Virus record (IMG/VR): IMGVR_UViG_3300044712_001937
Span: 1 to 64,000 of that record
Strand: one strand, 5' to 3'
Length of the DNA stretch: 64,000 nt
Position numbers and translations under genes: made by a program. Shown one piece after another: positions 2,342-11,227 of the stretch. Numbering within the stretch: position 1 is the stretch's first letter; each line of letters opens with the position of its first letter. The notes below the pieces were generated by a model that did no database searches, had not been told where the DNA came from, and was given only the letters and a program-made list of their open reading frames with translations.

Positions 2342-4837
2342 TTAACTATTTCTGAATTCTATTGGAGCACTTATTGCACCAACAGTACCACTCATATATA
2401 TTTTATAATTTATATTTGACCAGCAACCTTGTGCTGAACTTACTGCTATAACACATTCATCAGGATATTTATCACTTGGTGCAGAATTAATATTTCCATT
2501 ATCTAAAGCATTTATATACCAACATGTTTTAGATGTTGAAACTGATGGAATTGCAATCCATGTCCATTCACTTGCACTACTACTAAATGTAACATTTACA
2601 GTACCGCTACTACATGCAAGTATTTTATTACCACCAACAACAAGTCCAGATGTTACACTTGGGCGTAATCCACTGGTTAATTTTCCATAATAATATGGAT
2701 ATATACCAGTTAAACTTGCAGTTACAGTTGCAGTACATCCTGTAGGTAATGGATTGTCATAAATACCACCTTTACTATTATATGGTTGAACACCTGCACA
2801 ATATTGAGCAAAACTACTCCAAGATTGTGAACCTATAACTACAGGATAATTAATAACATTTAACATATAAGGTGTTGAAGTATTAGGATAAAAACCAGCT
2901 ATTTGTGCACCTGTAAAACAATATCCATTAACACCACAACTTCTTTTATCACATATTGCAGTATATTGTGGATTTATACAACCAGCATTAAATGTACTAA
3001 CTACTGATAATGTTGGAATAGAACAACCTACCTCATATAATGAAGTTGATGGCGAGAATGTTGTAGTTACAGATGGAATAATTAATGTCGGATATTGTAC
3101 TGGAACCAATATTTCTTCAAATAATTGGAAAGCTGTTTTACCAGTTAATATTGTTCCCGGTGTAATTCCACCTACAGAACATACTGCGGGTGAACTTAAA
3201 TTATATTTATCGGTACTTGACCCACCCGTAGTATATATTACTATAGTATCATTTTTAAGTTTTACTTGAGTACTTCCACTACCTATAAAACTTCTAAGTC
3301 TTAAATTATGTGAAGTAACTCCTGTACTAACACCAACACCTGTTCCCATATTTGATACACTTGTAATTCCACTATATGTACCAAAACTACCACTTGTTCC
3401 TGAATAAGTGCCACCAGATATATATATAAAAGCATCATCATAAATAATTTTTATTTTACTTGAATCTGCACTTAAAATTGTTCTAAAACGAAGACTTTTA
3501 TCTACTTTATTATTAAATACAGGACCTCCTACGTTATAAGTCGTACCAGTATTTAAACTACCATTAACATCAAAACTAATATATCCATTAGTATAAAAAC
3601 CATCACTATAATCCCCACCTATTGATGAAAATTCAATATCGTTAAATACTATTCCGGGGTATTGATATGATGTTAAAAATAACCCAATATTATGAGTAAT
3701 ATCTCCATTAACGAATATCCAACCATTTTTATCACCACCAGTTGTTTTATAATTATAAATCCAAGATTTATTAGGTGAAAAATTACTTAAATACCCACGT
3801 CTTAGTGGTTGACCAGTTGGTGCACCAAGTCTAATATATCCATCAGTATCTCTGTAATAATAATTATATAAAGATGTATATGTACCTTGAAATTGAATTT
3901 GTGAAGTAACCATATACATTGTTTGTACACCTGTTTTACCTGAAAAAAATCCAATATTAGTCGCACCAGTTACAGTTTTATCTAAATAAACTTTAGTATT
4001 ACCAGTATAAGTATTAAATACACTATAACTAACGCTTGATGCAGTTTCAGTAATACCTCTATATTGTAAAACAATACCTGTATTATTTTTAGTTCCAACG
4101 AGCATTGGTTTATTTATAACATTAATTCCAGTTGGTTTTACTGGTGTTAATTTACCAATCGTACTTGATAAATAATATAAAGTACCCCCGCTAATAGGTC
4201 TATTATTAACATCTAAAATTTCAATAGTAGAAATATTACCAGCGTATGTTAATGTAAATCCACTACCATAATCAAACGGATATATTATATCATAATCACT
4301 TTCAGTAACAATACCTAATGGTTCAATAGTGTTTGCATTTGCATTTGAAACTTTCATAAATACACCACCATAATTTTTAGTGTAACCAATAACATCACCA
4401 ACTACAAAAGAATGCAAAGCTTGTACATATTTTTTACTAATATTTTCACCTTGATTTTGAATTGTAGTAGTCGAAAATAAAGGATACCAATTTAAATTAT
4501 TACCAAGAGCTGCAACTTTAGATGAGTTTGTTGGATATAAAGTATTCCATTGGTCTATTGTAATATAATTATCATTATACTTTGGATGTAAATGATAAAT
4601 TTCATTAGTGCTAAGAACATGAACTAACATTCCAAGTCTACGCTGACCTGACGATATTCCATCAAATTCAATTCTATTATTAATACTATCCACTGGTATT
4701 GCATTTCTATCAAGAGTTGTTTTTACTTCCATAAAACCACCAACTCCAAGTACCGAATGATGTGTACCATAAGTATCTCCTGAAGAACCTCTTACTATTG
4801 GAGAAGCTAATACCGTACCTTTATAATATTCTGCCAT
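2342..4837 (-). CDS. Tail-fibre-like/structural protein, Gly/Thr/Ser-rich, Cys-rich C-terminus
   Basis: 831 aa ORF; shares the SVGGITPGT...FEEILVP module with the adjacent gene; low-complexity G/T/S composition. Confidence 0.55.
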   Translation of the reverse strand: MAEYYKGTVLASPIVRGSSGDTYGTHHSVLGVGGFMEVKTTLDRNAIPVDSINNRIEFDGISSGQRRLGMLVHVLSTNEIYHLHPKYNDNYITIDQWNTLYPTNSSKVAALGNNLNWYPLFSTTTIQNQGENISKKYVQALHSFVVGDVIGYTKNYGGVFMKVSNANANTIEPLGIVTESDYDIIYPFDYGSGFTLTYAGNISTIEILDVNNRPISGGTLYYLSSTIGKLTPVKPTGINVINKPMLVGTKNNTGIVLQYRGITETASSVSYSVFNTYTGNTKVYLDKTVTGATNIGFFSGKTGVQTMYMVTSQIQFQGTYTSLYNYYYRDTDGYIRLGAPTGQPLRRGYLSNFSPNKSWIYNYKTTGGDKNGWIFVNGDITHNIGLFLTSYQYPGIVFNDIEFSSIGGDYSDGFYTNGYISFDVNGSLNTGTTYNVGGPVFNNKVDKSLRFRTILSADSSKIKIIYDDAFIYISGGTYSGTSGSFGTYSGITSVSNMGTGVGVSTGVTSHNLRLRSFIGSGSTQVKLKNDTIVIYTTGGSSTDKYNLSSPAVCSVGGITPGTILTGKTAFQLFEEILVPVQYPTLIIPSVTTTFSPSTSLYEVGCSIPTLSVVSTFNAGCINPQYTAICDKRSCGVNGYCFTGAQIAGFYPNTSTPYMLNVINYPVVIGSQSWSSFAQYCAGVQPYNSKGGIYDNPLPTGCTATVTASLTGIYPYYYGKLTSGLRPSVTSGLVVGGNKILACSSGTVNVTFSSSASEWTWIAIPSVSTSKTCWYINALDNGNINSAPSDKYPDECVIAVSSAQGCWSNINYKIYMSGTVGAISAPIEFRNS

Positions 4838-4862: not shown

Positions 4863-5936
4863 TTAACTAATAGCTATACAATATGTTCCAGAAATTCTAC
4901 TATCTGACCTTGCTACGTAATATGATGTACAATAATTATTTTTGTTTTTAAACATCATTGTAAATAATGAGCCAATACCTACATTACCCCATGCATTATT
5001 AGGTAATCCATTTATTGTAAATGAAGGAGTACCCATAACACTTGGATATGCATAATAAAAGAATTCATTATTAAATGTCATCGACATACTCGTTGTTTTA
5101 ATATTACATAATTGAGAAGTAATTGTATTGCACATAAGAGTACATGTTCCAGTACAATTTCCACTATAATATGGTGTTGAAGATTTAAAACAATATCTTC
5201 TATTCATCCATGTTATCTTAGTACAAGAAATTACACTTATTTGACCAGTATTTTTAGCACAAATACCATAATCAGCGAATGTACATAATTCATTTCCAGT
5301 AGGTATTACAATGTAATCAAATTCAGGAGGTATTATATATGGTGTATAATCCATAATATTACCACCTGCGTATGTTGTAGGATAGCAATGAGCTGGATTA
5401 GATGTCCAATTACAATTAAAATCAATATATGGGTCACCTACCGTATCTATATATATTCCACAAATAGGACTTGTCGTTTTATTAGCATACCAACTTAGAC
5501 AACCTACAGAATAATCACCAAATTCTCTACAATTTGCAGAAATACTACCACCACTATAACCATTATAAACTGAAATTCCAATACTTGGCGGTAATTCAGG
5601 TACTAATATATTTTGAAGAATTGTTGAAATAGGACAATTACTGATATTACTTCCTGCAATTAATCCACCTACAGTTATACTTGTTGGAGATGCACCACTA
5701 TATATACCTCCACCTTCAGCACCTGATACCACTTCTAATGTAATTTTACCATTACGATATGTTAATACTTCTCCATTAGTTCCACCTGTTGCAATAACGG
5801 GAATAAATCCGGAATCACCTCTTAAAGTTAAACCAGTTACATTTACAAATCTTGTAGTTCCTGATAATGTTAATGCGCTTCCACTTATTTGTTTAAATTG
5901 TAAGTCTTCAAGGTTTGGACGACTAAAAAACGACAT
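4863..5936 (-). CDS. Fibre-like/structural protein paralogous in part to 2342..4837
   Basis: 357 aa ORF; ITVGGLIAGS...ILQNILVP module; C-terminal YYAYP motif; many Cys. Confidence 0.5.
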   Translation of the reverse strand: MSFFSRPNLEDLQFKQISGSALTLSGTTRFVNVTGLTLRGDSGFIPVIATGGTNGEVLTYRNGKITLEVVSGAEGGGIYSGASPTSITVGGLIAGSNISNCPISTILQNILVPELPPSIGISVYNGYSGGSISANCREFGDYSVGCLSWYANKTTSPICGIYIDTVGDPYIDFNCNWTSNPAHCYPTTYAGGNIMDYTPYIIPPEFDYIVIPTGNELCTFADYGICAKNTGQISVISCTKITWMNRRYCFKSSTPYYSGNCTGTCTLMCNTITSQLCNIKTTSMSMTFNNEFFYYAYPSVMGTPSFTINGLPNNAWGNVGIGSLFTMMFKNKNNYCTSYYVARSDSRISGTYCIAIS

Positions 5937-6135: not shown

Positions 6136-7233
6136 TTAAAGTTTAAATTTATTTTGCATTTTTGCTTTTTTTCTAAGTTCATTAACTTCTCTCAATGCAT
6201 TTGGGTTATAAATTTCACGTTTCACTATTGACACAAGATGATTAAATTCACTTTCAGTTATTGCTTGTCCTACATACCCCTCATTTTTCAATATATAACT
6301 TTTAGGAGCTGAACTTGATGCTGAAGGATTACCTTCTGAATCAATAGTACTTTCAAATGTCATCTCAAGCAATTCCTGAATTTTTTCAGTAACATTTGCA
6401 GTAATTTTCTGCTTAGTCTTTTTCAATGCCTTTTCAAGCATATCAACTACATTCTCCTGATGATTTCTTTTTACTTCAGCATATGCCATAGTAAAATCTT
6501 TCATTGGTGAACTATGTTTAAGTTCAGAAATTATAGCTAATGAACCATAACAGTCACGAATCATTAAATTCCAAACTTGTTCAGCATATGTGAACGATGG
6601 AAATTTATCAATTGCAACAATTTCTCCTTCAATAAAAACAATCATTCCAATCATTTTCTTAGGACGTTCAAAATGTGCAATAAATTGTTCAAGTTTTTTA
6701 TCATACTTGCTAAAATATACATCTAAATAATTACCAGCAGATGATTGAGTATCTATACCTAATTTATTAATCGCAGGATAAATTCTTGAATATCCGGGTG
6801 CTGTTCCAACAGTATTAAATACCATTTCACGCATAGTTACTGGAAGCATACGGAATTCTTGAGTACCTCTAAAAGTACCACCTTGAGAACCTTGGACACA
6901 TCCAGCATCATTATAAGTAACATTTGCTCCTTTAGCAATATAACCTGCCTTAGTCATACCGTGATTTTGAGCAACTTGCTTTGTCATAACAGCCATTTGT
7001 GTAGGTACAATTACTTCTTTACTTTCTTTATTTTGAAAGTTTATTTGTCCATATGAACTATTACCAGCTACTAATGCTGTTAATGGGTTTGCAAACCGAG
7101 TATCTAATGAATATTCTGAATCTGTTGTTAAACCAACAATTTGCATATTCAATATAGATTGAACTATGATGTTACCATCATTATCCTTGATAGGACGGCA
7201 ACCTTTAAGTAATTCTGTAAATTCTCTTGTCAT
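6136..7233 (-). CDS. ARPP-like (ARG/rhodanese-phosphatase-associated) domain protein
   Basis: 365 aa; motifs KQVAQNHGM, AGCVQGSQGG and GMIVFIEGEIVAID resemble ARPP-family proteins as recalled (no HMM run); starts 12 nt after the vWA gene stop. Confidence 0.5.
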   Translation of the reverse strand: MTREFTELLKGCRPIKDNDGNIIVQSILNMQIVGLTTDSEYSLDTRFANPLTALVAGNSSYGQINFQNKESKEVIVPTQMAVMTKQVAQNHGMTKAGYIAKGANVTYNDAGCVQGSQGGTFRGTQEFRMLPVTMREMVFNTVGTAPGYSRIYPAINKLGIDTQSSAGNYLDVYFSKYDKKLEQFIAHFERPKKMIGMIVFIEGEIVAIDKFPSFTYAEQVWNLMIRDCYGSLAIISELKHSSPMKDFTMAYAEVKRNHQENVVDMLEKALKKTKQKITANVTEKIQELLEMTFESTIDSEGNPSASSSAPKSYILKNEGYVGQAITESEFNHLVSIVKREIYNPNALREVNELRKKAKMQNKFKL

Positions 7234-7245
7234 AGTATATATTTT

Positions 7246-8874
7246 TTAAACGTTTACACTAATTTTTTTTGACCTTTTAACTGGTGCAGCTTCAAGAGCC
7301 AACATTTGAGTTTCAAGCCATCTTTTTGTATCAATTTCAAGCAATCTTGCAGTAATTTGTGGTTGAATTGCACTTGGGTTACTTATTGCCATTGGAACTA
7401 CACTTGTACCTAATTTACGTACATTAGCACCCATTTCTGCACTTGTTATTGGCGAAATCTGAAACATTGGAGTATTTCTACCAGTTTCTGTTTGCCAAAT
7501 CGAAATAACCTCATTAGTTAATCCATCATAAGCATTTTCATAGCCATCAGTTATGATAAAAATAGCATCATAAGGTTTTGACGAATTTTCAACTTTCAAT
7601 AATCCAATAAATGAACTTGCTAAATCAGTTACTTCACCACCAGTTACAACAATATTAGTTAATTCCGCAGATTTACCCAATACTTTTGCTGTAAAATCAG
7701 CAATTGCTTTTGGAGTATTCTTTGATTCAATTTTATCACCTGACATTGAATTACTATCATCAACAATAATTCCAATATTTTTATAATAGAAATTATTGAT
7801 TCTTTTCTTAATAGCAAGTTTATCTATTGCTGAAATTATTTCAGGAGTAAATGATGTTTCATAACCAGTTTTATATAAAGCCAAGAAATCTGTTGCTTTA
7901 TCCATATCAACAGTCTTTTCAACACCCAACTTTGCAGTTGATTTTGTTTGACGGATTTGTTGATTTGTTGATGTAACTTCAACATTCTTTCTGATTAAAG
8001 CTTTAGTTGCTTGTTTTTGAATATCAGTAGACCACATTGAATGATATTGTGGATGTTTAACACTTGAAATTAATCCAAGTAAAACTTCTTCCGGAACATT
8101 TTTAATTCCAGTAATATCAACCTTTGCTTTTAAATATTCACTCAACAATGGAAAATCTAAAGCTGGATAATTTACACCATTATCTTTTTTAAATAAAAAA
8201 AGAAATAATTTAAACGCACGTGAAGCATCACCATTAAAATATTTTAATATATATTCATTAATAATATTACTTTCCTTTTCAGTTGTAACGCCATTTGAAT
8301 ATACAACAAGTTTACGAGCAATTGAAAGCAATATAGATGTTTTCTTTTGACCATATACATGTTTTAAAATTTCAGCAATTTTATTTCGATATTTTAATGA
8401 AAAAAATTCAAGATTTGATTGTCCCCAAATATATCCAAGAATAATTTTTCTTGTCCTTTCATTATTTACTTTAGAATTTTTTAAATCAACAAAAAGACGT
8501 AACACATAAGGTAAACCATTATCTGCAAGATTATCTAATGATGATAATATTGCTTTATCACTTAAACCATTATCATACCAATCAATAGGATTAACAATAT
8601 TACATGCACCTCCCTTTAATGTATTTTTTAATTCATTAAGCAATACTTCAGATATAAATCGACCAGTAGCACCTTTTTGGGTTGCAATAATCAATGGGAG
8701 TTCTTTTGAAAGCATATACATATTCTTAATTTGAGATTGTATTGCTTTCAATTGTTCATCTTTAGAGTGGTAATAAGTAGCACTGCTCTTAGCACCACTT
8801 GCCACTGTCAAACCATCAGTAATTGATTGCTTAACTGTAGACAACATGTTGTTTGTTAATACCAAATTTTTCAT
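7246..8874 (-). CDS. Helical N-terminal region + C-terminal vWA (MIDAS) protein, TROVE/Ro60-like architecture
   Basis: 542 aa; MIDAS-type IIVDDSNSMSG and FIITDGYEN in the C-terminal ~180 aa; the preceding ~350 aa look alpha-helical and Lys/Leu-rich. vWA call is solid; TROVE relationship is inferred. Confidence 0.6.
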   Translation of the reverse strand: MKNLVLTNNMLSTVKQSITDGLTVASGAKSSATYYHSKDEQLKAIQSQIKNMYMLSKELPLIIATQKGATGRFISEVLLNELKNTLKGGACNIVNPIDWYDNGLSDKAILSSLDNLADNGLPYVLRLFVDLKNSKVNNERTRKIILGYIWGQSNLEFFSLKYRNKIAEILKHVYGQKKTSILLSIARKLVVYSNGVTTEKESNIINEYILKYFNGDASRAFKLFLFLFKKDNGVNYPALDFPLLSEYLKAKVDITGIKNVPEEVLLGLISSVKHPQYHSMWSTDIQKQATKALIRKNVEVTSTNQQIRQTKSTAKLGVEKTVDMDKATDFLALYKTGYETSFTPEIISAIDKLAIKKRINNFYYKNIGIIVDDSNSMSGDKIESKNTPKAIADFTAKVLGKSAELTNIVVTGGEVTDLASSFIGLLKVENSSKPYDAIFIITDGYENAYDGLTNEVISIWQTETGRNTPMFQISPITSAEMGANVRKLGTSVVPMAISNPSAIQPQITARLLEIDTKRWLETQMLALEAAPVKRSKKISVNV

Positions 8875-8960
8875 CTTACTAAATTTAAATTTTTGTTACA
8901 GTTATATTTATAAAAAATCAAAAATACATAAATTAATTTAATTAATCACAATAATAAACA

Positions 8961-9010
8961 AAAAAAATGGGCAAGTATTGTATAATTTCTTATACAAATC
9001 CCCGCCCATT
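8961..9010 (-). terminator. Terminator-like hairpin with GAAA tetraloop at the 3' end of the ncRNA cluster
   Basis: Minus strand: AATGGGC-gggga-t-TTGTATAA-gaaa-TTATACAA-tactt-GCCCATT followed by a T run. Confidence 0.6.
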
Positions 9011-9053
9011 AATTTTTGGAAAAATAAATCTTCTCAATAAGAGAAGAAGTTTA

Positions 9054-9119
9054 GTTGTATTTTTACAAGTTTGTGCCACCACTATCGGATGGCAAATTTC
9101 AATTTGCTGTATACACAAC
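9054..9119 (-). ncRNA. Stand-alone copy of the repeated RNA motif (element B)
   Basis: Minus strand: GTTGTGTATACAGCAAA ... TGCCA/TGGCA hairpin ... TGTAAAAATACAAC; terminal 7-bp stem GTTGTGT/ATACAAC. Confidence 0.55.
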
Positions 9120-9322
9120 AAGTTCTTCCATAATGCTTTTTTTTGAAAAACTCCCACACTTCTGTGGCAGAAAACCATTTTTAACCTTCAAATGTTAGAT
9201 GATACTACCCTTTTTATAAGTAAAATTTCTCGTATCAAGAACTGAAAAACACCACAAATTACGGTATTGTGGACAACCACTTCAAACATCCTTTGGATGA
9301 TGATAATATTTCGGGAATATTG

Positions 9323-9440
9323 TAAAAGTATTTTTGTTTTTGTGCAAGTTTAAGAGACTTGTGCCTTAACCACTTGGCTATTTTTCAATTTTGGCTGAAA
9401 AAGTCGGAGTCGAACCAACGAATTTACTGTAAATACTTTA
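9323..9440 (-). ncRNA. Circularly permuted tRNA-Lys(CUU)-like RNA closed by the repeated motif (element D)
   Basis: Minus-strand order: motif strand 1, T arm (GTTGG-TTCGACT-CCGAC), acceptor 3' TTTTTCA-G-CCA, linker AAAT, acceptor 5' TGAAAAA, D arm GCCAAGTGGTTAAGGC, anticodon arm CAAGT-CTCTTAA-ACTTG, motif strand 2. Confidence 0.75.
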
Positions 9441-9557
9441 AGTTTTCCCTTATGCTGTACCTCAAAGTTTGAATTGCTTCAGGGACAATGAGGAATTCCA
9501 TTCACACGGTTACGTTAACTTTCGTTAAGAGGCTTGACCGTGCATCACGTTTATATT

Positions 9558-10187
9558 TTAAAGAACTCTACCAAATGACCAACCAATTGGTATTGTATCA
9601 TTAGTTTTTATTTTTTTATTTTCATTACCGTTTGTAATCCAACGAGTATTATATTGAGAATTATTTTCACCACAGTTTTTACCTTTATGAACTTTCTTCA
9701 TCAACATTATTGTTTCATTAGAATGTTTCTTACCATCCCAATATCCATTCATTCCATTTTTGCTCAAAAATTCTTTTTGACCTATAGATTGCTTTTTGCA
9801 TTGATTATTTCTCCATTCATCGTTATTCATTAATTCAATAAAACGTTTATTACCCTTTTTAGAATTTATGATTTGTTGTTCATGAGAAAATCCTCCAGTA
9901 CCACCAACACGTAAATTAATACATTTAGGGTCTAACAATAGAGAATCATTAACCAATTCATTTTCTCTTAAAGCCAAAGAACTTCGGTCAGAATAATATT
10001 CAAGCACTTCTAATTTAAAATTTTCTTTGCCATATTTATTTATCGACCTTTTCAATCTTTTTCCACTTCCCAAATAATCATCATTTAAATTATTTGTAGA
10101 ATGCATTCCAATATAAAATTCACCTTTTATTAAATTGGTTGTTTTATAAATAAAATGATATTTTTTTAACTCATTTAAATTTGCCAT
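9558..10187 (-). mobile_element. Free-standing GIY-YIG (Seg-like) homing endonuclease
   Basis: HFIYKTTNLIKGEFYIGMHST, YLGSGK, conserved E; NUMOD3-like KKHSNET motif. Confidence 0.85.
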
Positions 10188-10238: not shown

Positions 10239-10373
10239 TGGGGAGAATTGGAATCGAACCAATAATCAACTGTTTTCAAGACAATTTGCTTTACCTTTAC
10301 TGAAAACACCATTAGTTTTCTCACTTAAGAGAACATTGAGATAGTATTTTTTGTTTATTTTTGCTATCTCCCC
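10239..10373 (-). ncRNA. tRNA-like RNA with ~60-nt motif-bearing insertion in the D-loop (element E)
   Basis: Acceptor GGGGAGA/TCTCCCC-A, T arm ATTGG-TTCGATT-CCAAT, anticodon arm ATTGT-CTTGAAA-ACAGT; D region interrupted by AAAAAATAC...GTGTTTTCAGTAAA; no encoded CCA. Confidence 0.7.
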
Positions 10374-10400: not shown

Positions 10401-10429
10401 AAATGAAGAGTTTTTAATTCTTCATTTTG
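10401..10429 (-). terminator. Terminator-like hairpin
   Basis: AAAATGAAGA/TCTTCATTTT inverted repeat followed by T on the minus strand; AT-rich, so weak. Confidence 0.4.
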
Positions 10430-10439
10430 TATGTTAAAT

Positions 10440-10542
10440 TTAAGGTGGCGCAGACCTATTATGGCTGTCATTTTCTGTCATTACATCAGAACCACAAATT
10501 ACGGTTGGGTTAACCAGCAACTACATTTCTGCATTTCGTAAT
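10440..10542 (-). ncRNA. Putative structured ncRNA downstream of tRNA-Met (element G)
   Basis: Non-coding and locally GC-richer; stems GATTACG/CGTAATT, GTTG/CAAC and TTCTG/CAGAA; shares an exact 15-mer with 9251..9265. Confidence 0.4.
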
Positions 10543-10641: not shown

Positions 10642-11061
10642 TTAATATCTATTAGAAACACATTCTTTACAATGTCCATTTACACCATTCCATCTTCGAT
10701 TGCATTTATGAAATTCTTCCATTTTTTTCATCTTTTTACATTTTGAACAAAATGAATATCCTTCTTTACATTTAATTCTTTTATGGAAACCTCCGAATCT
10801 TCTTTCAGGTAAATTACATTTCATATGACTAAATGCAATATTATCTAAACTAAAAAACAACTCTTTAGGATTTTCACTATGAAGCCAATTTTCCTTATGT
10901 TCAATACTTAATTCATCAACATTTAAAATTGGCTTTTTACATTTAAAACAAATATTCTCATTCAATTTACATAATAAATGAAATAATATTTGTTTTCTTA
11001 ATTTACCAGATGCAGTACCTAAAGGCATTCCTAATTGTGCATCTTTATCTTTACAACTCAT
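10642..11061 (-). CDS. HNH endonuclease with CxxC zinc knuckles
   Basis: CFKC...SIEHKE...NIAFSHMKCN (HNH-type) plus C-terminal CSKC/CKEC. Confidence 0.7.
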   Translation of the reverse strand: MSCKDKDAQLGMPLGTASGKLRKQILFHLLCKLNENICFKCKKPILNVDELSIEHKENWLHSENPKELFFSLDNIAFSHMKCNLPERRFGGFHKRIKCKEGYSFCSKCKKMKKMEEFHKCNRRWNGVNGHCKECVSNRY

Positions 11062-11094: not shown

Positions 11095-11227
11095 TGGGGA
11101 AGGTCAGAATCGAACTGACAATCAATTGTTTTAACGACAACTTGCTGTACCTTTACTGTAAATATAGCCAGTTCTCCAAAAGGAGTAATACGATTATATT
11201 TTTTGTATATAATTTGCATACTTCCCC
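11095..11227 (-). ncRNA. tRNA-like RNA with motif-bearing D-loop insertion (element F), paralog of element E
   Basis: Acceptor GGGGAAG/CTTCCCC-A, T arm GTCAG-TTCGATT-CTGAC, anticodon arm GTTGT-CGTTAAA-ACAAT; insertion AAAAAATAT...ATATTTACAGTAAA. Confidence 0.7.

What the first reader, a model, noticed from the sequence alone, without database searches (positions are those of the whole stretch)
9054..9119. tRNA-free minimal version of the motif RNA
Seen: the same motif (GTGTATACAGCAAA ... TGTAAAAATAC) closes a simple TGCCA/TGGCA hairpin instead of a tRNA body. This shows the motif is modular and independent of tRNA. Inference: the shortest ligand for the putative vWA protein, and the best substrate for defining the binding site.
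Basis: partly seen in the sequence, partly recalled or inferred. Interest (0 to 1): 0.6.

Follow-up and report, generated by a model that had tools for sequence, protein, structure and literature searches.

The report
Y-RNA-like hairpin of a jumbo phage
This is a small, conserved hairpin RNA gene in a 365-kb phage, most likely the tRNA-free partner RNA (a "Y RNA") of a hidden relative of the Ro60 RNA-surveillance protein encoded just downstream.

Summary
It folds into an irregular rod. The same RNA occurs in 65 of 74 related phage loci. Across 43 distinct sequences, 96.5% of cells are paired and 12 of 26 pairs show compensatory changes. A second tRNA-free paralogue exists in other loci.

- two tRNA-like chimeras carrying the helix in the D-loop;
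- one YrlA-like permuted tRNA;
- this hairpin.

The shared helix covaries between these classes. It also recurs upstream of homologues only 30-43% identical.

The canonical Ro-binding motif (GNCGAA) and all Rfam models are absent, so I call this a new variant of a known kind.

Binding and expression are untested. How the lower stem closes is unresolved (simple rod or three-way junction).

Side result: the conserved downstream ARPP-1 protein is predicted to dock on the MIDAS face of the Ro60-like protein.

The parts
9043..9128 (-). Mini RNA, 86 nt. A rod of lower stem, stem 2, conserved internal loop, stems 3 and 4, and a variable apical hairpin.
   Evidence: Covariance model R1 scores 85.7 bits, E 1e-17, and this is the only copy in the 364.7-kb genome. 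Covariation. Fold z = -3.5.
9123..9128 (-). Lower stem, 5' strand GAAGAA. Always purine-rich and followed by the invariant AAC.
   Evidence: Invariant in 43 sequences. The equivalent stem in paralogues reads GGGAA/UUCCC, GAGAA/UUCUC or GGAG/CUCC. Compensatory changes appear when types A, B and YrlA-like are pooled.
9043..9048 (-). Lower stem, proximal 3' strand UUCUUC. It overlaps the 5' arm of hairpin T1.
9113..9119 (-). Stem 2, 5' strand GUUGUGU.
   Evidence: Pairs with 9060..9054. Compensatory changes at 4 of its 7 pairs within type A and at more across classes.
9054..9060 (-). Stem 2, 3' strand AUACAAC.
9103..9112 (-). Conserved 5' side of the internal loop plus stem 3 (AUACAG-CAAA). U18, C20, A21 and G22 are invariant. 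This is the proposed protein-contact strand.
   Evidence: Invariant columns. The same UnUnCAG word occurs in all four module copies in the window and in distant loci L078, L079 and L080.
9061..9068 (-). 3' side: stem 3 partner (UUGU) and the A-run (AAAA) facing the internal loop.
   Evidence: U-A changes to C-G or G-U at pairs 22-25. Sequence.
9074..9094 (-). Apical hairpin. Its sequence is free and only the pairing is kept.
   Evidence: 6 of its 7 pairs show compensatory changes. It is replaced by a 61-nt tRNA-like domain in the neighbour.
9029..9047 (-). Hairpin T1 (UCUUCUC / GAGAAGA). Either a terminator-like hairpin or the third arm of a junction.
   Evidence: Terminator scan. Its 3' arm tracks changes in the 5' arm in relatives.
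9018..9028 (-). U-rich tract UUUAUUUUUCC. Either the terminator tail of T1 or the distal partner of GGAAGAA in the three-way-junction model.
   Evidence: The base before GAAGAA (G or A) tracks the base after UUC (C or U): 32 of 43 paired against 25.6 in shuffles. The junction model gives -31.7 kcal/mol against -25.9 for the rod on 116 nt.
8960..9009 (-). Strong GC-rich hairpin followed by U8. Probable end of the ncRNA array transcript.
   Evidence: Conserved in relatives.
7246..8874 (-). 542-aa Ro60-like protein: TROVE-fold ring plus a vWA domain with MIDAS D372, S374, S376 and D443.
6136..7233 (-). ARPP-1 protein, 365 aa. A conserved downstream neighbour and the predicted partner of the MIDAS face.
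   Evidence: Pfam PF20208, E 6e-13. The same gene pair occurs in L077, L080 and L083. Complex score 0.61, best control 0.00.
9313..9449 (-). YrlA-like relative. It has the same closing helix (GGGAA...UUCCC) around a permuted tRNA-like domain.
   Evidence: R1 aligns both arms around a 61-nt insert. Rfam tRNA scores 34 bits on the inner part. Stem 2 is fully compensated relative to the mini.
10239..10373 (-). tRNA-like chimera 1. The module is inserted in the D-loop in reversed topology, with the lower stem capped by a loop.
   Evidence: Rfam tRNA scores 27 bits on the 3' part.
11095..11227 (-). tRNA-like chimera 2, with the same architecture.

Best explanation
The element is a small non-coding RNA gene on the minus strand. 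It is the last gene of an ncRNA array that also holds tRNA-Met, two tRNA-like chimeras and one YrlA-like RNA. The array ends in a strong terminator just before the promoter region of a Ro60-like gene.

The RNA folds into an 86-nt rod, or into a roughly 113-nt three-way junction if the distal U-tract is kept. Its conserved part is a bulged helix:
- a purine-rich lower stem followed by AAC;
- a 7-bp stem;
- an asymmetric internal loop with UnUnCAG on the 5' side and an A-run on the 3' side;
- a short stem.

I infer that this helix is the docking site for the 542-aa Ro60-like ring protein. That would make the RNA the functional equivalent of the tRNA-free 'long hairpin' Y RNAs of bacteria (YrlB, Yrn2). 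Because it has no effector (tRNA-like) domain, it most likely occupies or gates the protein, or competes with the tRNA-like module RNAs for it.

Shown: conservation, structure, strand, modularity, the fold of the protein, and the co-occurrence of RNA and protein.
Inferred: binding, expression, RNA ends and role.
For: 1. Structure. 96.5% of cells are paired and 12 of 26 pairs are compensated. 0 of 500 shuffles reach this, and slid controls give 41-54%. With types A and B and a few YrlA-like hits pooled (84 sequences), 19 of 26 pairs are compensated (that alignment is fitted to the model).

2. Strand. The G-U pair 15-85 is kept in 40 of 43 sequences, and other G-U pairs occur. Reverse-strand hits score 26-28 bits against 96-97 for the same intervals.

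4. Locus layout matches known Ro60 systems. Y RNAs lie within 4 kb upstream on the same strand. There are at least two per species, one tRNA-like and one plain long hairpin, often made from one precursor with a tRNA (PMC4201824). Phage phiLo Ro60 binds two upstream Yrl RNAs (PMC12135203).

5. Distribution. The core word occurs 214 times upstream on the gene's strand in 74 loci, against 12 downstream and 55 on the other strand.

6. Distant homologues. The same helix type occurs upstream of homologues 43%, 35% and 30% identical (L080, L078, L079). L079 includes a tRNA-free copy.

7. Conserved strand. The 5' strand is the most conserved across all classes. This parallels Ro60 contacting mainly the 5' strand of Y RNA (PMC4201824).
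Against: - No binding or expression data exist. No RNA run was listed.
- The canonical Ro-binding words GNCGAAN0-1G and GGUCCGA are absent.
- No Rfam family matches even at E up to 10.
- The protein is linked to Ro60 by predicted fold only, at 12-13% identity with no HMM match.
- All 74 close loci belong to one phage clade, so synteny there is not independent evidence.
- Three more distant homologues (L081, L083, LR756500) show no obvious module upstream.
- RNA ends and the closing stem are unresolved.
Confidence: 0.6

Rival explanations
1. It is a cis-acting leader or attenuator of the Ro60-like gene. The protein, or a competing fold, would decide between the lower stem and hairpin T1 and so set read-through into the gene.
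For: It lies 115-189 nt upstream of the gene in 35 loci. The 3' strand of the lower stem overlaps the 5' arm of a terminator-like hairpin, which gives two exclusive pairings.
Against: A strong terminator and an AT-rich promoter-like region lie between it and the gene. In 30 of 65 loci it lies 460-1650 nt upstream with an ORF in between. The type B paralogue sits elsewhere, 4-5 nt after a tRNA.
Confidence: 0.1
2. The helix is recognised by something other than the Ro60-like protein. Candidates are the ARPP-1 enzyme, a host RNA-processing enzyme, or a host defence nuclease for which it is a decoy. In that case the Ro60-like gene is only a neighbour.
For: Binding is untested. ARPP-1 is as tightly linked to the locus as the Ro60-like gene. 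Type B copies abut tRNA 3' ends, where processing enzymes act.
Against: The fold and locus layout match Ro60 with Y RNA point by point. ARPP-1 is predicted to sit on the vWA face, which leaves the ring free. The module is found only at this locus among 49 tRNA genes in the genome.
Confidence: 0.15
3. It only marks the end of the ncRNA operon. That is, it is a set of stabilising or terminator hairpins with no trans function, or a decaying deletion derivative of a tRNA-like chimera.
For: It is the last element before tandem terminator-like hairpins. The window does hold a decayed type B remnant near 10423..10405.
Against: Unpaired bases in the internal loop are invariant in 43 sequences while the stems covary. 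This is not expected of a mere terminator or a relic. Two paralogous tRNA-free families are kept across loci: 84 hits in 49 loci.
Confidence: 0.08
4. It is a DNA-level element such as a recombination site, an origin, or a homing-endonuclease target.
For: GIY-YIG and HNH endonuclease ORFs are interspersed in the array.
Against: The pairing is strand-specific, with G-U pairs. The reverse strand scores far lower. Compensatory changes preserve RNA helices rather than a DNA word.
Confidence: 0.03

Closest known systems
Bacterial 'long hairpin' Y RNAs (S. Typhimurium YrlB, M. smegmatis YrlB, D. radiodurans Yrn2; PMC4201824)
   Same: A small RNA encoded just upstream of, and on the same strand as, a Ro60-type gene. 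It sits in an array with a tRNA and a tRNA-like Y RNA. It forms a long stem from its 5' and 3' ends with internal loops. It has no tRNA-like domain.
   Different: It has no GNCGAAN0-1G motif and a different conserved internal loop (UnUnCAG facing an A-run). Its apical loop is not pyrimidine-rich. The partner protein is not recognisable as TROVE by sequence. Binding is untested.
YrlA, the tRNA-like Y RNA (PMC4201824; bioRxiv 10.1101/312249)
   Same: The neighbour at 9449..9313 has the YrlA layout: closing stem, T-arm, closed acceptor stem, D-arm. The mini shares that closing stem.
   Different: The mini itself has no T-arm, D-arm or acceptor element. The locus also holds a topology not described for YrlA, with the helix inserted in the D-loop of an acceptor-ended tRNA-like RNA.
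Thermus phage phiLo Ro60 with Yrl1 and Yrl2 (PMC12135203; PDB 9KOP, 9L5Y)
   Different: phiLo Ro60 is a recognisable TROVE protein and its RNAs carry CGAA. Here neither holds. The array is larger, and an ARPP-1 partner is linked.
Metazoan Y RNAs with Ro60 (PDB 1YVP)
   Same: A bulged terminal helix serves as the protein docking site, with a variable distal part. The best structural matches of the protein are Xenopus and human Ro60.
   Different: No sequence similarity and no Rfam Y_RNA hit. The genetic context is different (phage), and there is no La-type U-tail logic.

Membership tests
Y RNA (RNA partner of a Ro60-type protein) | Encoded within about 4 kb of the Ro60 gene on the same strand | tested here: met
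   It ends 169 nt upstream of the 542-aa gene on the minus strand. It lies 115-1650 nt upstream in 65 related loci.
Y RNA (RNA partner of a Ro60-type protein) | Long helix formed by the 5' and 3' ends, interrupted by a conserved bulge or internal loop | tested here: met
Y RNA (RNA partner of a Ro60-type protein) | Conserved Ro-binding word (GGUCCGA in animals; GNCGAAN0-1G or CGAA in bacteria and phage) | tested here: not met
   No such word occurs in the conserved part of 9128..9043. The conserved word is UnUnCAG(Y)AA instead.
Y RNA (RNA partner of a Ro60-type protein) | Match to a curated Rfam model | tested here: not met
   No hit over 9000..9135 other than a chance-level pestivirus row (E 8), at the gathering threshold or at E up to 10.
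Y RNA (RNA partner of a Ro60-type protein) | Physically bound to, and stabilised by, the Ro60 protein | not testable with these tools
   No RNA run was listed. No RNA-protein modelling tool was available.
Ro60 / TROVE protein (the 542-aa neighbour) | Match to the Pfam TROVE model (PF05731) | tested here: not met
   No hit for the protein, for 82 family members, or in the six-frame genome. The controls did register.
Ro60 / TROVE protein (the 542-aa neighbour) | Ring of helical repeats followed by a vWA domain, as one full-length fold | tested here: met
Ro60 / TROVE protein (the 542-aa neighbour) | MIDAS motif in the vWA domain | tested here: met
   D372, S374, S376 and D443 are invariant or nearly so in 82 members.
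tRNA or tRNA-like RNA | Cloverleaf elements (T-arm, D-arm, acceptor stem) | tested here: not met
   ARAGORN and the Rfam tRNA model find nothing in 9043..9128.
Intrinsic terminator or attenuator | GC-rich hairpin followed by a U-run, placed so that it controls the downstream gene | tested here: inconclusive
   Hairpin T1 at 9047..9029 plus a U-rich tail matches the scan, but its stem is weak. A separate strong terminator follows. In 30 loci an ORF separates the RNA from the gene.

The most novel reading that the evidence does not exclude
The hairpin may be the free form of a portable docking helix that a clade of giant phages has grafted onto tRNA scaffolds in two topologies. On this reading the helix recruits a cryptic Ro60-like ring whose MIDAS face carries the uncharacterised ARPP-1 enzyme. 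That would make an RNA-addressed enzyme complex aimed at tRNA-type substrates, for example to counter host tRNA-directed defence. The tRNA-free hairpin would act as a switchable competitor or gate, with two exclusive closings of its lower stem setting how much complex is available.
Probability: 0.2. Interest if true: 0.85.

Novelty: new variant of a known kind. Interest (0 to 1): 0.62.

Why it matters
Ro60 with Y RNA is a conserved RNA-surveillance particle whose bacterial and phage roles are still poorly understood. This locus would extend the system in four ways:
- It adds a large protein family that no sequence model links to Ro60: 330 clusters at 50% identity, mostly viral.
- It adds a new RNA docking motif.
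- It adds a new way of joining that motif to tRNA bodies.
- It names a first candidate ligand (ARPP-1) for a Ro60-type MIDAS site. The role of MIDAS in Ro60 is described as unclear (PMC12135203).

The tRNA-free hairpin is the simplest natural substrate for mapping the protein-RNA contact.

Tried and rejected
- Sequence searches for the protein gave nothing useful: Pfam, PHROGs, PDB phmmer and a PDB profile search. Only the fold gave the answer.
- Rfam found no family for the hairpin at the gathering threshold or at E up to 10.
- RNA evidence: no RNA run was listed.
- A 14-mer mismatch scan was not above chance.
- My search for the stem-2 partner strand had an uninformative control. Shuffled 7-mers also found partners in 101 of 151 cases in this AT-rich DNA. 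I use only the explicit examples from that call, not the count.
- The MAFFT alignment of the 3' extension (A3) was too poorly aligned for column counts. I used an anchor-based script instead. Its anchoring failed in about 7 sequences, so the x1:y1 result is only modest support.
- Free-energy folds of 116 and 176 nt place local hairpins within each strand of the module. I rejected these because the bases involved do not covary that way (A19 varies freely), whereas the inter-strand stem 2 does covary.
- Distant homologues L081, L083 and LR756500 (26-29% identity) showed no obvious module upstream. L076 (46%) and L082 had little or no upstream DNA.
- RtcB is absent from the genome. An Rnl2-type ligase lies far away at 207.7 kb. 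I therefore make no RNA-repair operon claim.
- No genetic code other than table 11 was used.

Full report
WHAT IS THERE

The window is the first 64 kb of a complete 364.7-kb phage genome with terminal repeats. It has 26% G+C and 49 tRNA genes. The finding lies on the minus strand. The two motif halves are at 9116..9103 and 9067..9057, around a hairpin at 9094..9074.

A further stem, GAAGAA (9128..9123) with UUCUUC (9048..9043), closes it, giving an 86-nt rod. From base to tip the rod runs:
- the lower stem;
- a small internal loop (C-UU facing UAAA-C);
- a 7-bp stem 2;
- an asymmetric internal loop (AUACA facing AAAA);
- a 4-bp stem 3;
- a bulge;
- a 3-bp stem 4;
- the apical hairpin (z = -3.5, 0 of 200 shuffles fold as well).

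IS IT MORE THAN CHANCE?

Simple word matching is not. Comparison with relatives is decisive.

The 542-aa neighbour has relatives at 60-80% identity on 74 IMG/VR contigs, many of 300-360 kb. The hairpin is present upstream in 65 of these.

In a MAFFT alignment of 43 distinct copies that was not fitted to any structure:
- 96.5% of cells form standard pairs, against 41-54% with the partner slid by 1-3 columns;
- 12 of 26 pairs carry compensatory changes;
- no shuffle out of 500 reaches any of the measures.

The apical hairpin changes sequence freely but keeps its pairing. By contrast, U18, C20, A21 and G22 on the 5' side of the internal loop never change.

Conserved G-U pairs and much lower reverse-strand scores show that the constraint acts on a minus-strand transcript.

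A covariance model finds exactly one copy in the genome.

A second tRNA-free paralogue, type B, sits 4-5 nt after a tRNA in many related loci. In this window only a decayed remnant of it remains, near 10423..10405. Pooling both types and a few YrlA-like hits gives compensated changes at 19 of 26 pairs (that alignment is fitted to the model).

MODULARITY

The same helix occurs three more times within 2 kb on the same strand.

At 9449..9313 it closes a permuted tRNA-like domain. The order is T-arm, a closed 7-bp acceptor stem followed by GCCA, D-arm, then an anticodon-like arm. The model of the mini aligns both arms there, around a 61-nt insert. Relative to the mini, stem 2 is changed at four positions and every change is compensated.

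At 10373..10239 and 11227..11095 the helix is turned round. Its lower stem is capped by a small loop and its open end enters the D-loop of an acceptor-ended tRNA-like RNA.

Across the classes the lower stem reads GAAGAA/UUCUUC, GGGAA/UUCCC, GAGAA/UUCUC or GGAG/CUCC. It is always purine-rich on the 5' side and followed by AAC.

THE PROTEIN

The 542-aa ORF (8874..7246) has a MIDAS motif but matches nothing in Pfam, PHROGs or PDB sequences. A profile built from 82 family members matches nothing either.

Because the family scans left it open, I ran the large representative search once. It found 330 clusters at 50% identity, down to about 25% identity.

With that alignment, AlphaFold gives pLDDT 92.9 and pTM 0.91.
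- The twelve best Foldseek matches are all Ro60, Rsr or TROVE entries.
- vWA-only matches stay at 10 or below.
- Language-model look-alikes also include TROVE clusters.

The genome has no canonical TROVE gene. The protein is a Ro60 homologue by fold, at 12-13% identity. It is not a family member by any sequence criterion.

WHY THE RNA AND PROTEIN BELONG TOGETHER (INFERENCE)

In the characterised systems (PMC4201824):
- Y RNAs are encoded within a few kb upstream of Ro60 on the same strand.
- They can be cut from a precursor that includes a tRNA.

Phage phiLo Ro60 binds two upstream stem-bulge-stem RNAs (PMC12135203). The present locus has that same layout.

The core word is concentrated upstream on the gene's strand: 214 occurrences, against 12 downstream and 55 on the opposite strand, in 74 loci. 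Those loci are one clade, so I also looked further out. Homologues at 43%, 35% and 30% identity (L080, L078, L079) carry RNAs with the same kind of helix upstream. One copy in L079 has no tRNA part. Three still more distant homologues do not show it.

The 5' strand is the best-conserved part in all classes. This parallels the finding that Ro60 contacts mainly the 5' strand of the Y RNA stem.

WHAT DIFFERS FROM KNOWN Y RNAs

The GNCGAA / GGUCCGA word is absent, and no Rfam model matches. A different docking motif is plausible for so divergent a protein. It also means that binding cannot be assumed.

UNRESOLVED: HOW THE ROD IS CLOSED

Directly 3' of the rod lies hairpin T1 (9047..9029). Its 5' arm overlaps the proximal UUCUUC. 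After T1 comes a U-rich tract ending in CC (9028..9018), which can pair with GGAAGAA instead.

For the three-way junction (P0, module, T1):
- On 116 nt it is more stable than the rod: -31.7 against -25.9 kcal/mol.
- The base before GAAGAA tracks the base after UUC: G with C, A with U. 32 of 43 are paired against 25.6 in shuffles, and 5 of 2000 shuffles reach this. This is modest support, and the sequences are related.

For the rod:
- Type B copies and all paralogous modules have only the simple closing.

T1 with its U-tract may also simply be the first of two terminators. The second, 9009..8960, is strong. Transcript ends would settle this.

AGAINST A LEADER ROLE

In 30 of 65 loci an ORF separates the hairpin from the gene. 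A terminator and a promoter-like region also intervene.

SIDE RESULT

The gene after the Ro60-like gene encodes an ARPP-1 domain protein. ARPP-1 is an uncharacterised predicted enzyme proposed to act on ribose moieties (PMC9503650). The gene pair is kept in homologues at 43%, 35% and 26% identity.

A complex prediction supports binding but does not show it:
- score 0.61 in each of three runs, best of 3 controls 0.00;
- in calibration this mark was reached by 58 of 80 solved complexes and 2 of 110 mismatched pairs (the counts hold only roughly here, because my own alignments were used);
- the runs agree in at least 86% of contacts, and the partner's pLDDT is at least 83.

The interface is the MIDAS face (residues 374-376 and 445-464) against ARPP residues that include the invariant 186-189 stretch.

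VERDICT

The element is a real, conserved, structured small-RNA gene. It is best read as the tRNA-free Y-RNA-like partner of a cryptic Ro60-like protein in a clade of giant phages. It is a new variant of a known kind. Expression, binding and role remain to be tested.

Noticed in passing
window 10239-10373 and 11095-11227 (minus strand): Two tRNA-like RNAs have 7-bp acceptor stems, T-arms and anticodon-like arms. Their D-loop carries the whole docking helix in reversed topology, with the lower stem capped by a small loop. I found no description of this architecture for YrlA-type RNAs in the papers searched.
   Followed up: partly
window 9313-9449 (minus strand): A YrlA-like permuted tRNA. The 3' strand of the acceptor stem is followed by GCCA and then by a short loop and the 5' strand. 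The stem has 7 bp, the feature that made M. smegmatis YrlA an RNase P substrate with CCA addition (PMC4201824).
   Followed up: partly
window 6136-7233 (minus strand); also L077, L080, L083: An ARPP-1 (PF20208) gene always follows the Ro60-like gene. It is predicted to dock on the MIDAS face: score 0.61, best of 3 controls 0.00. In calibration the mark was reached by 58 of 80 solved complexes and 2 of 110 mismatched pairs (counts rough, own alignments). Runs agree in at least 86% of contacts and the partner's pLDDT is at least 83. This Ro60-like/ARPP pairing is not among the ARPP neighbourhoods listed in PMC9503650.
   Followed up: partly
window 9558-10187 and 10642-11061 (minus strand): GIY-YIG/NUMOD3 and HNH endonuclease-like ORFs (weak Pfam hits) sit between the ncRNA genes of the array. 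This suggests homing-endonuclease insertions that have spread the array apart.
   Followed up: no
window about 10405-10423 (minus strand): GAAGAA-UUAAAAAC-UCUUC followed by a U-run, at the place where related loci carry the type B tRNA-free hairpin. It looks like a deletion remnant of that paralogue.
   Followed up: no
window about 9140-9205 (minus strand), with a hairpin at 9154-9167: A further conserved element lies between the YrlA-like RNA and the hairpin. It reads ACCUAACAUUUGA.GGUUAA.AAUGGUUUU, then a covarying hairpin, then UUUUUUCAAAAA. It is present in most related loci. Its function is unknown. It could be a terminator, a processing site or another small RNA.
   Followed up: no
window 10491-10504 and 9251-9264 (minus strand): The 14-mer CCGTAATTTGTGGT occurs twice in the array, once after tRNA-Met and once after the YrlA-like RNA.
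   Followed up: no
G000:C1:148036-148110 (outside the window): One of the 49 tRNA genes has a CUA anticodon, so it would read TAG. This may hint at stop-codon recoding in part of this genome. All ORFs used here are open under table 11, and no other code was applied.
   Followed up: no
window 2342-4837 and 4863-5936 (minus strand): The 831-aa and 357-aa ORFs directly downstream of the ARPP-1 gene have no Pfam or PHROG match.
   Followed up: no
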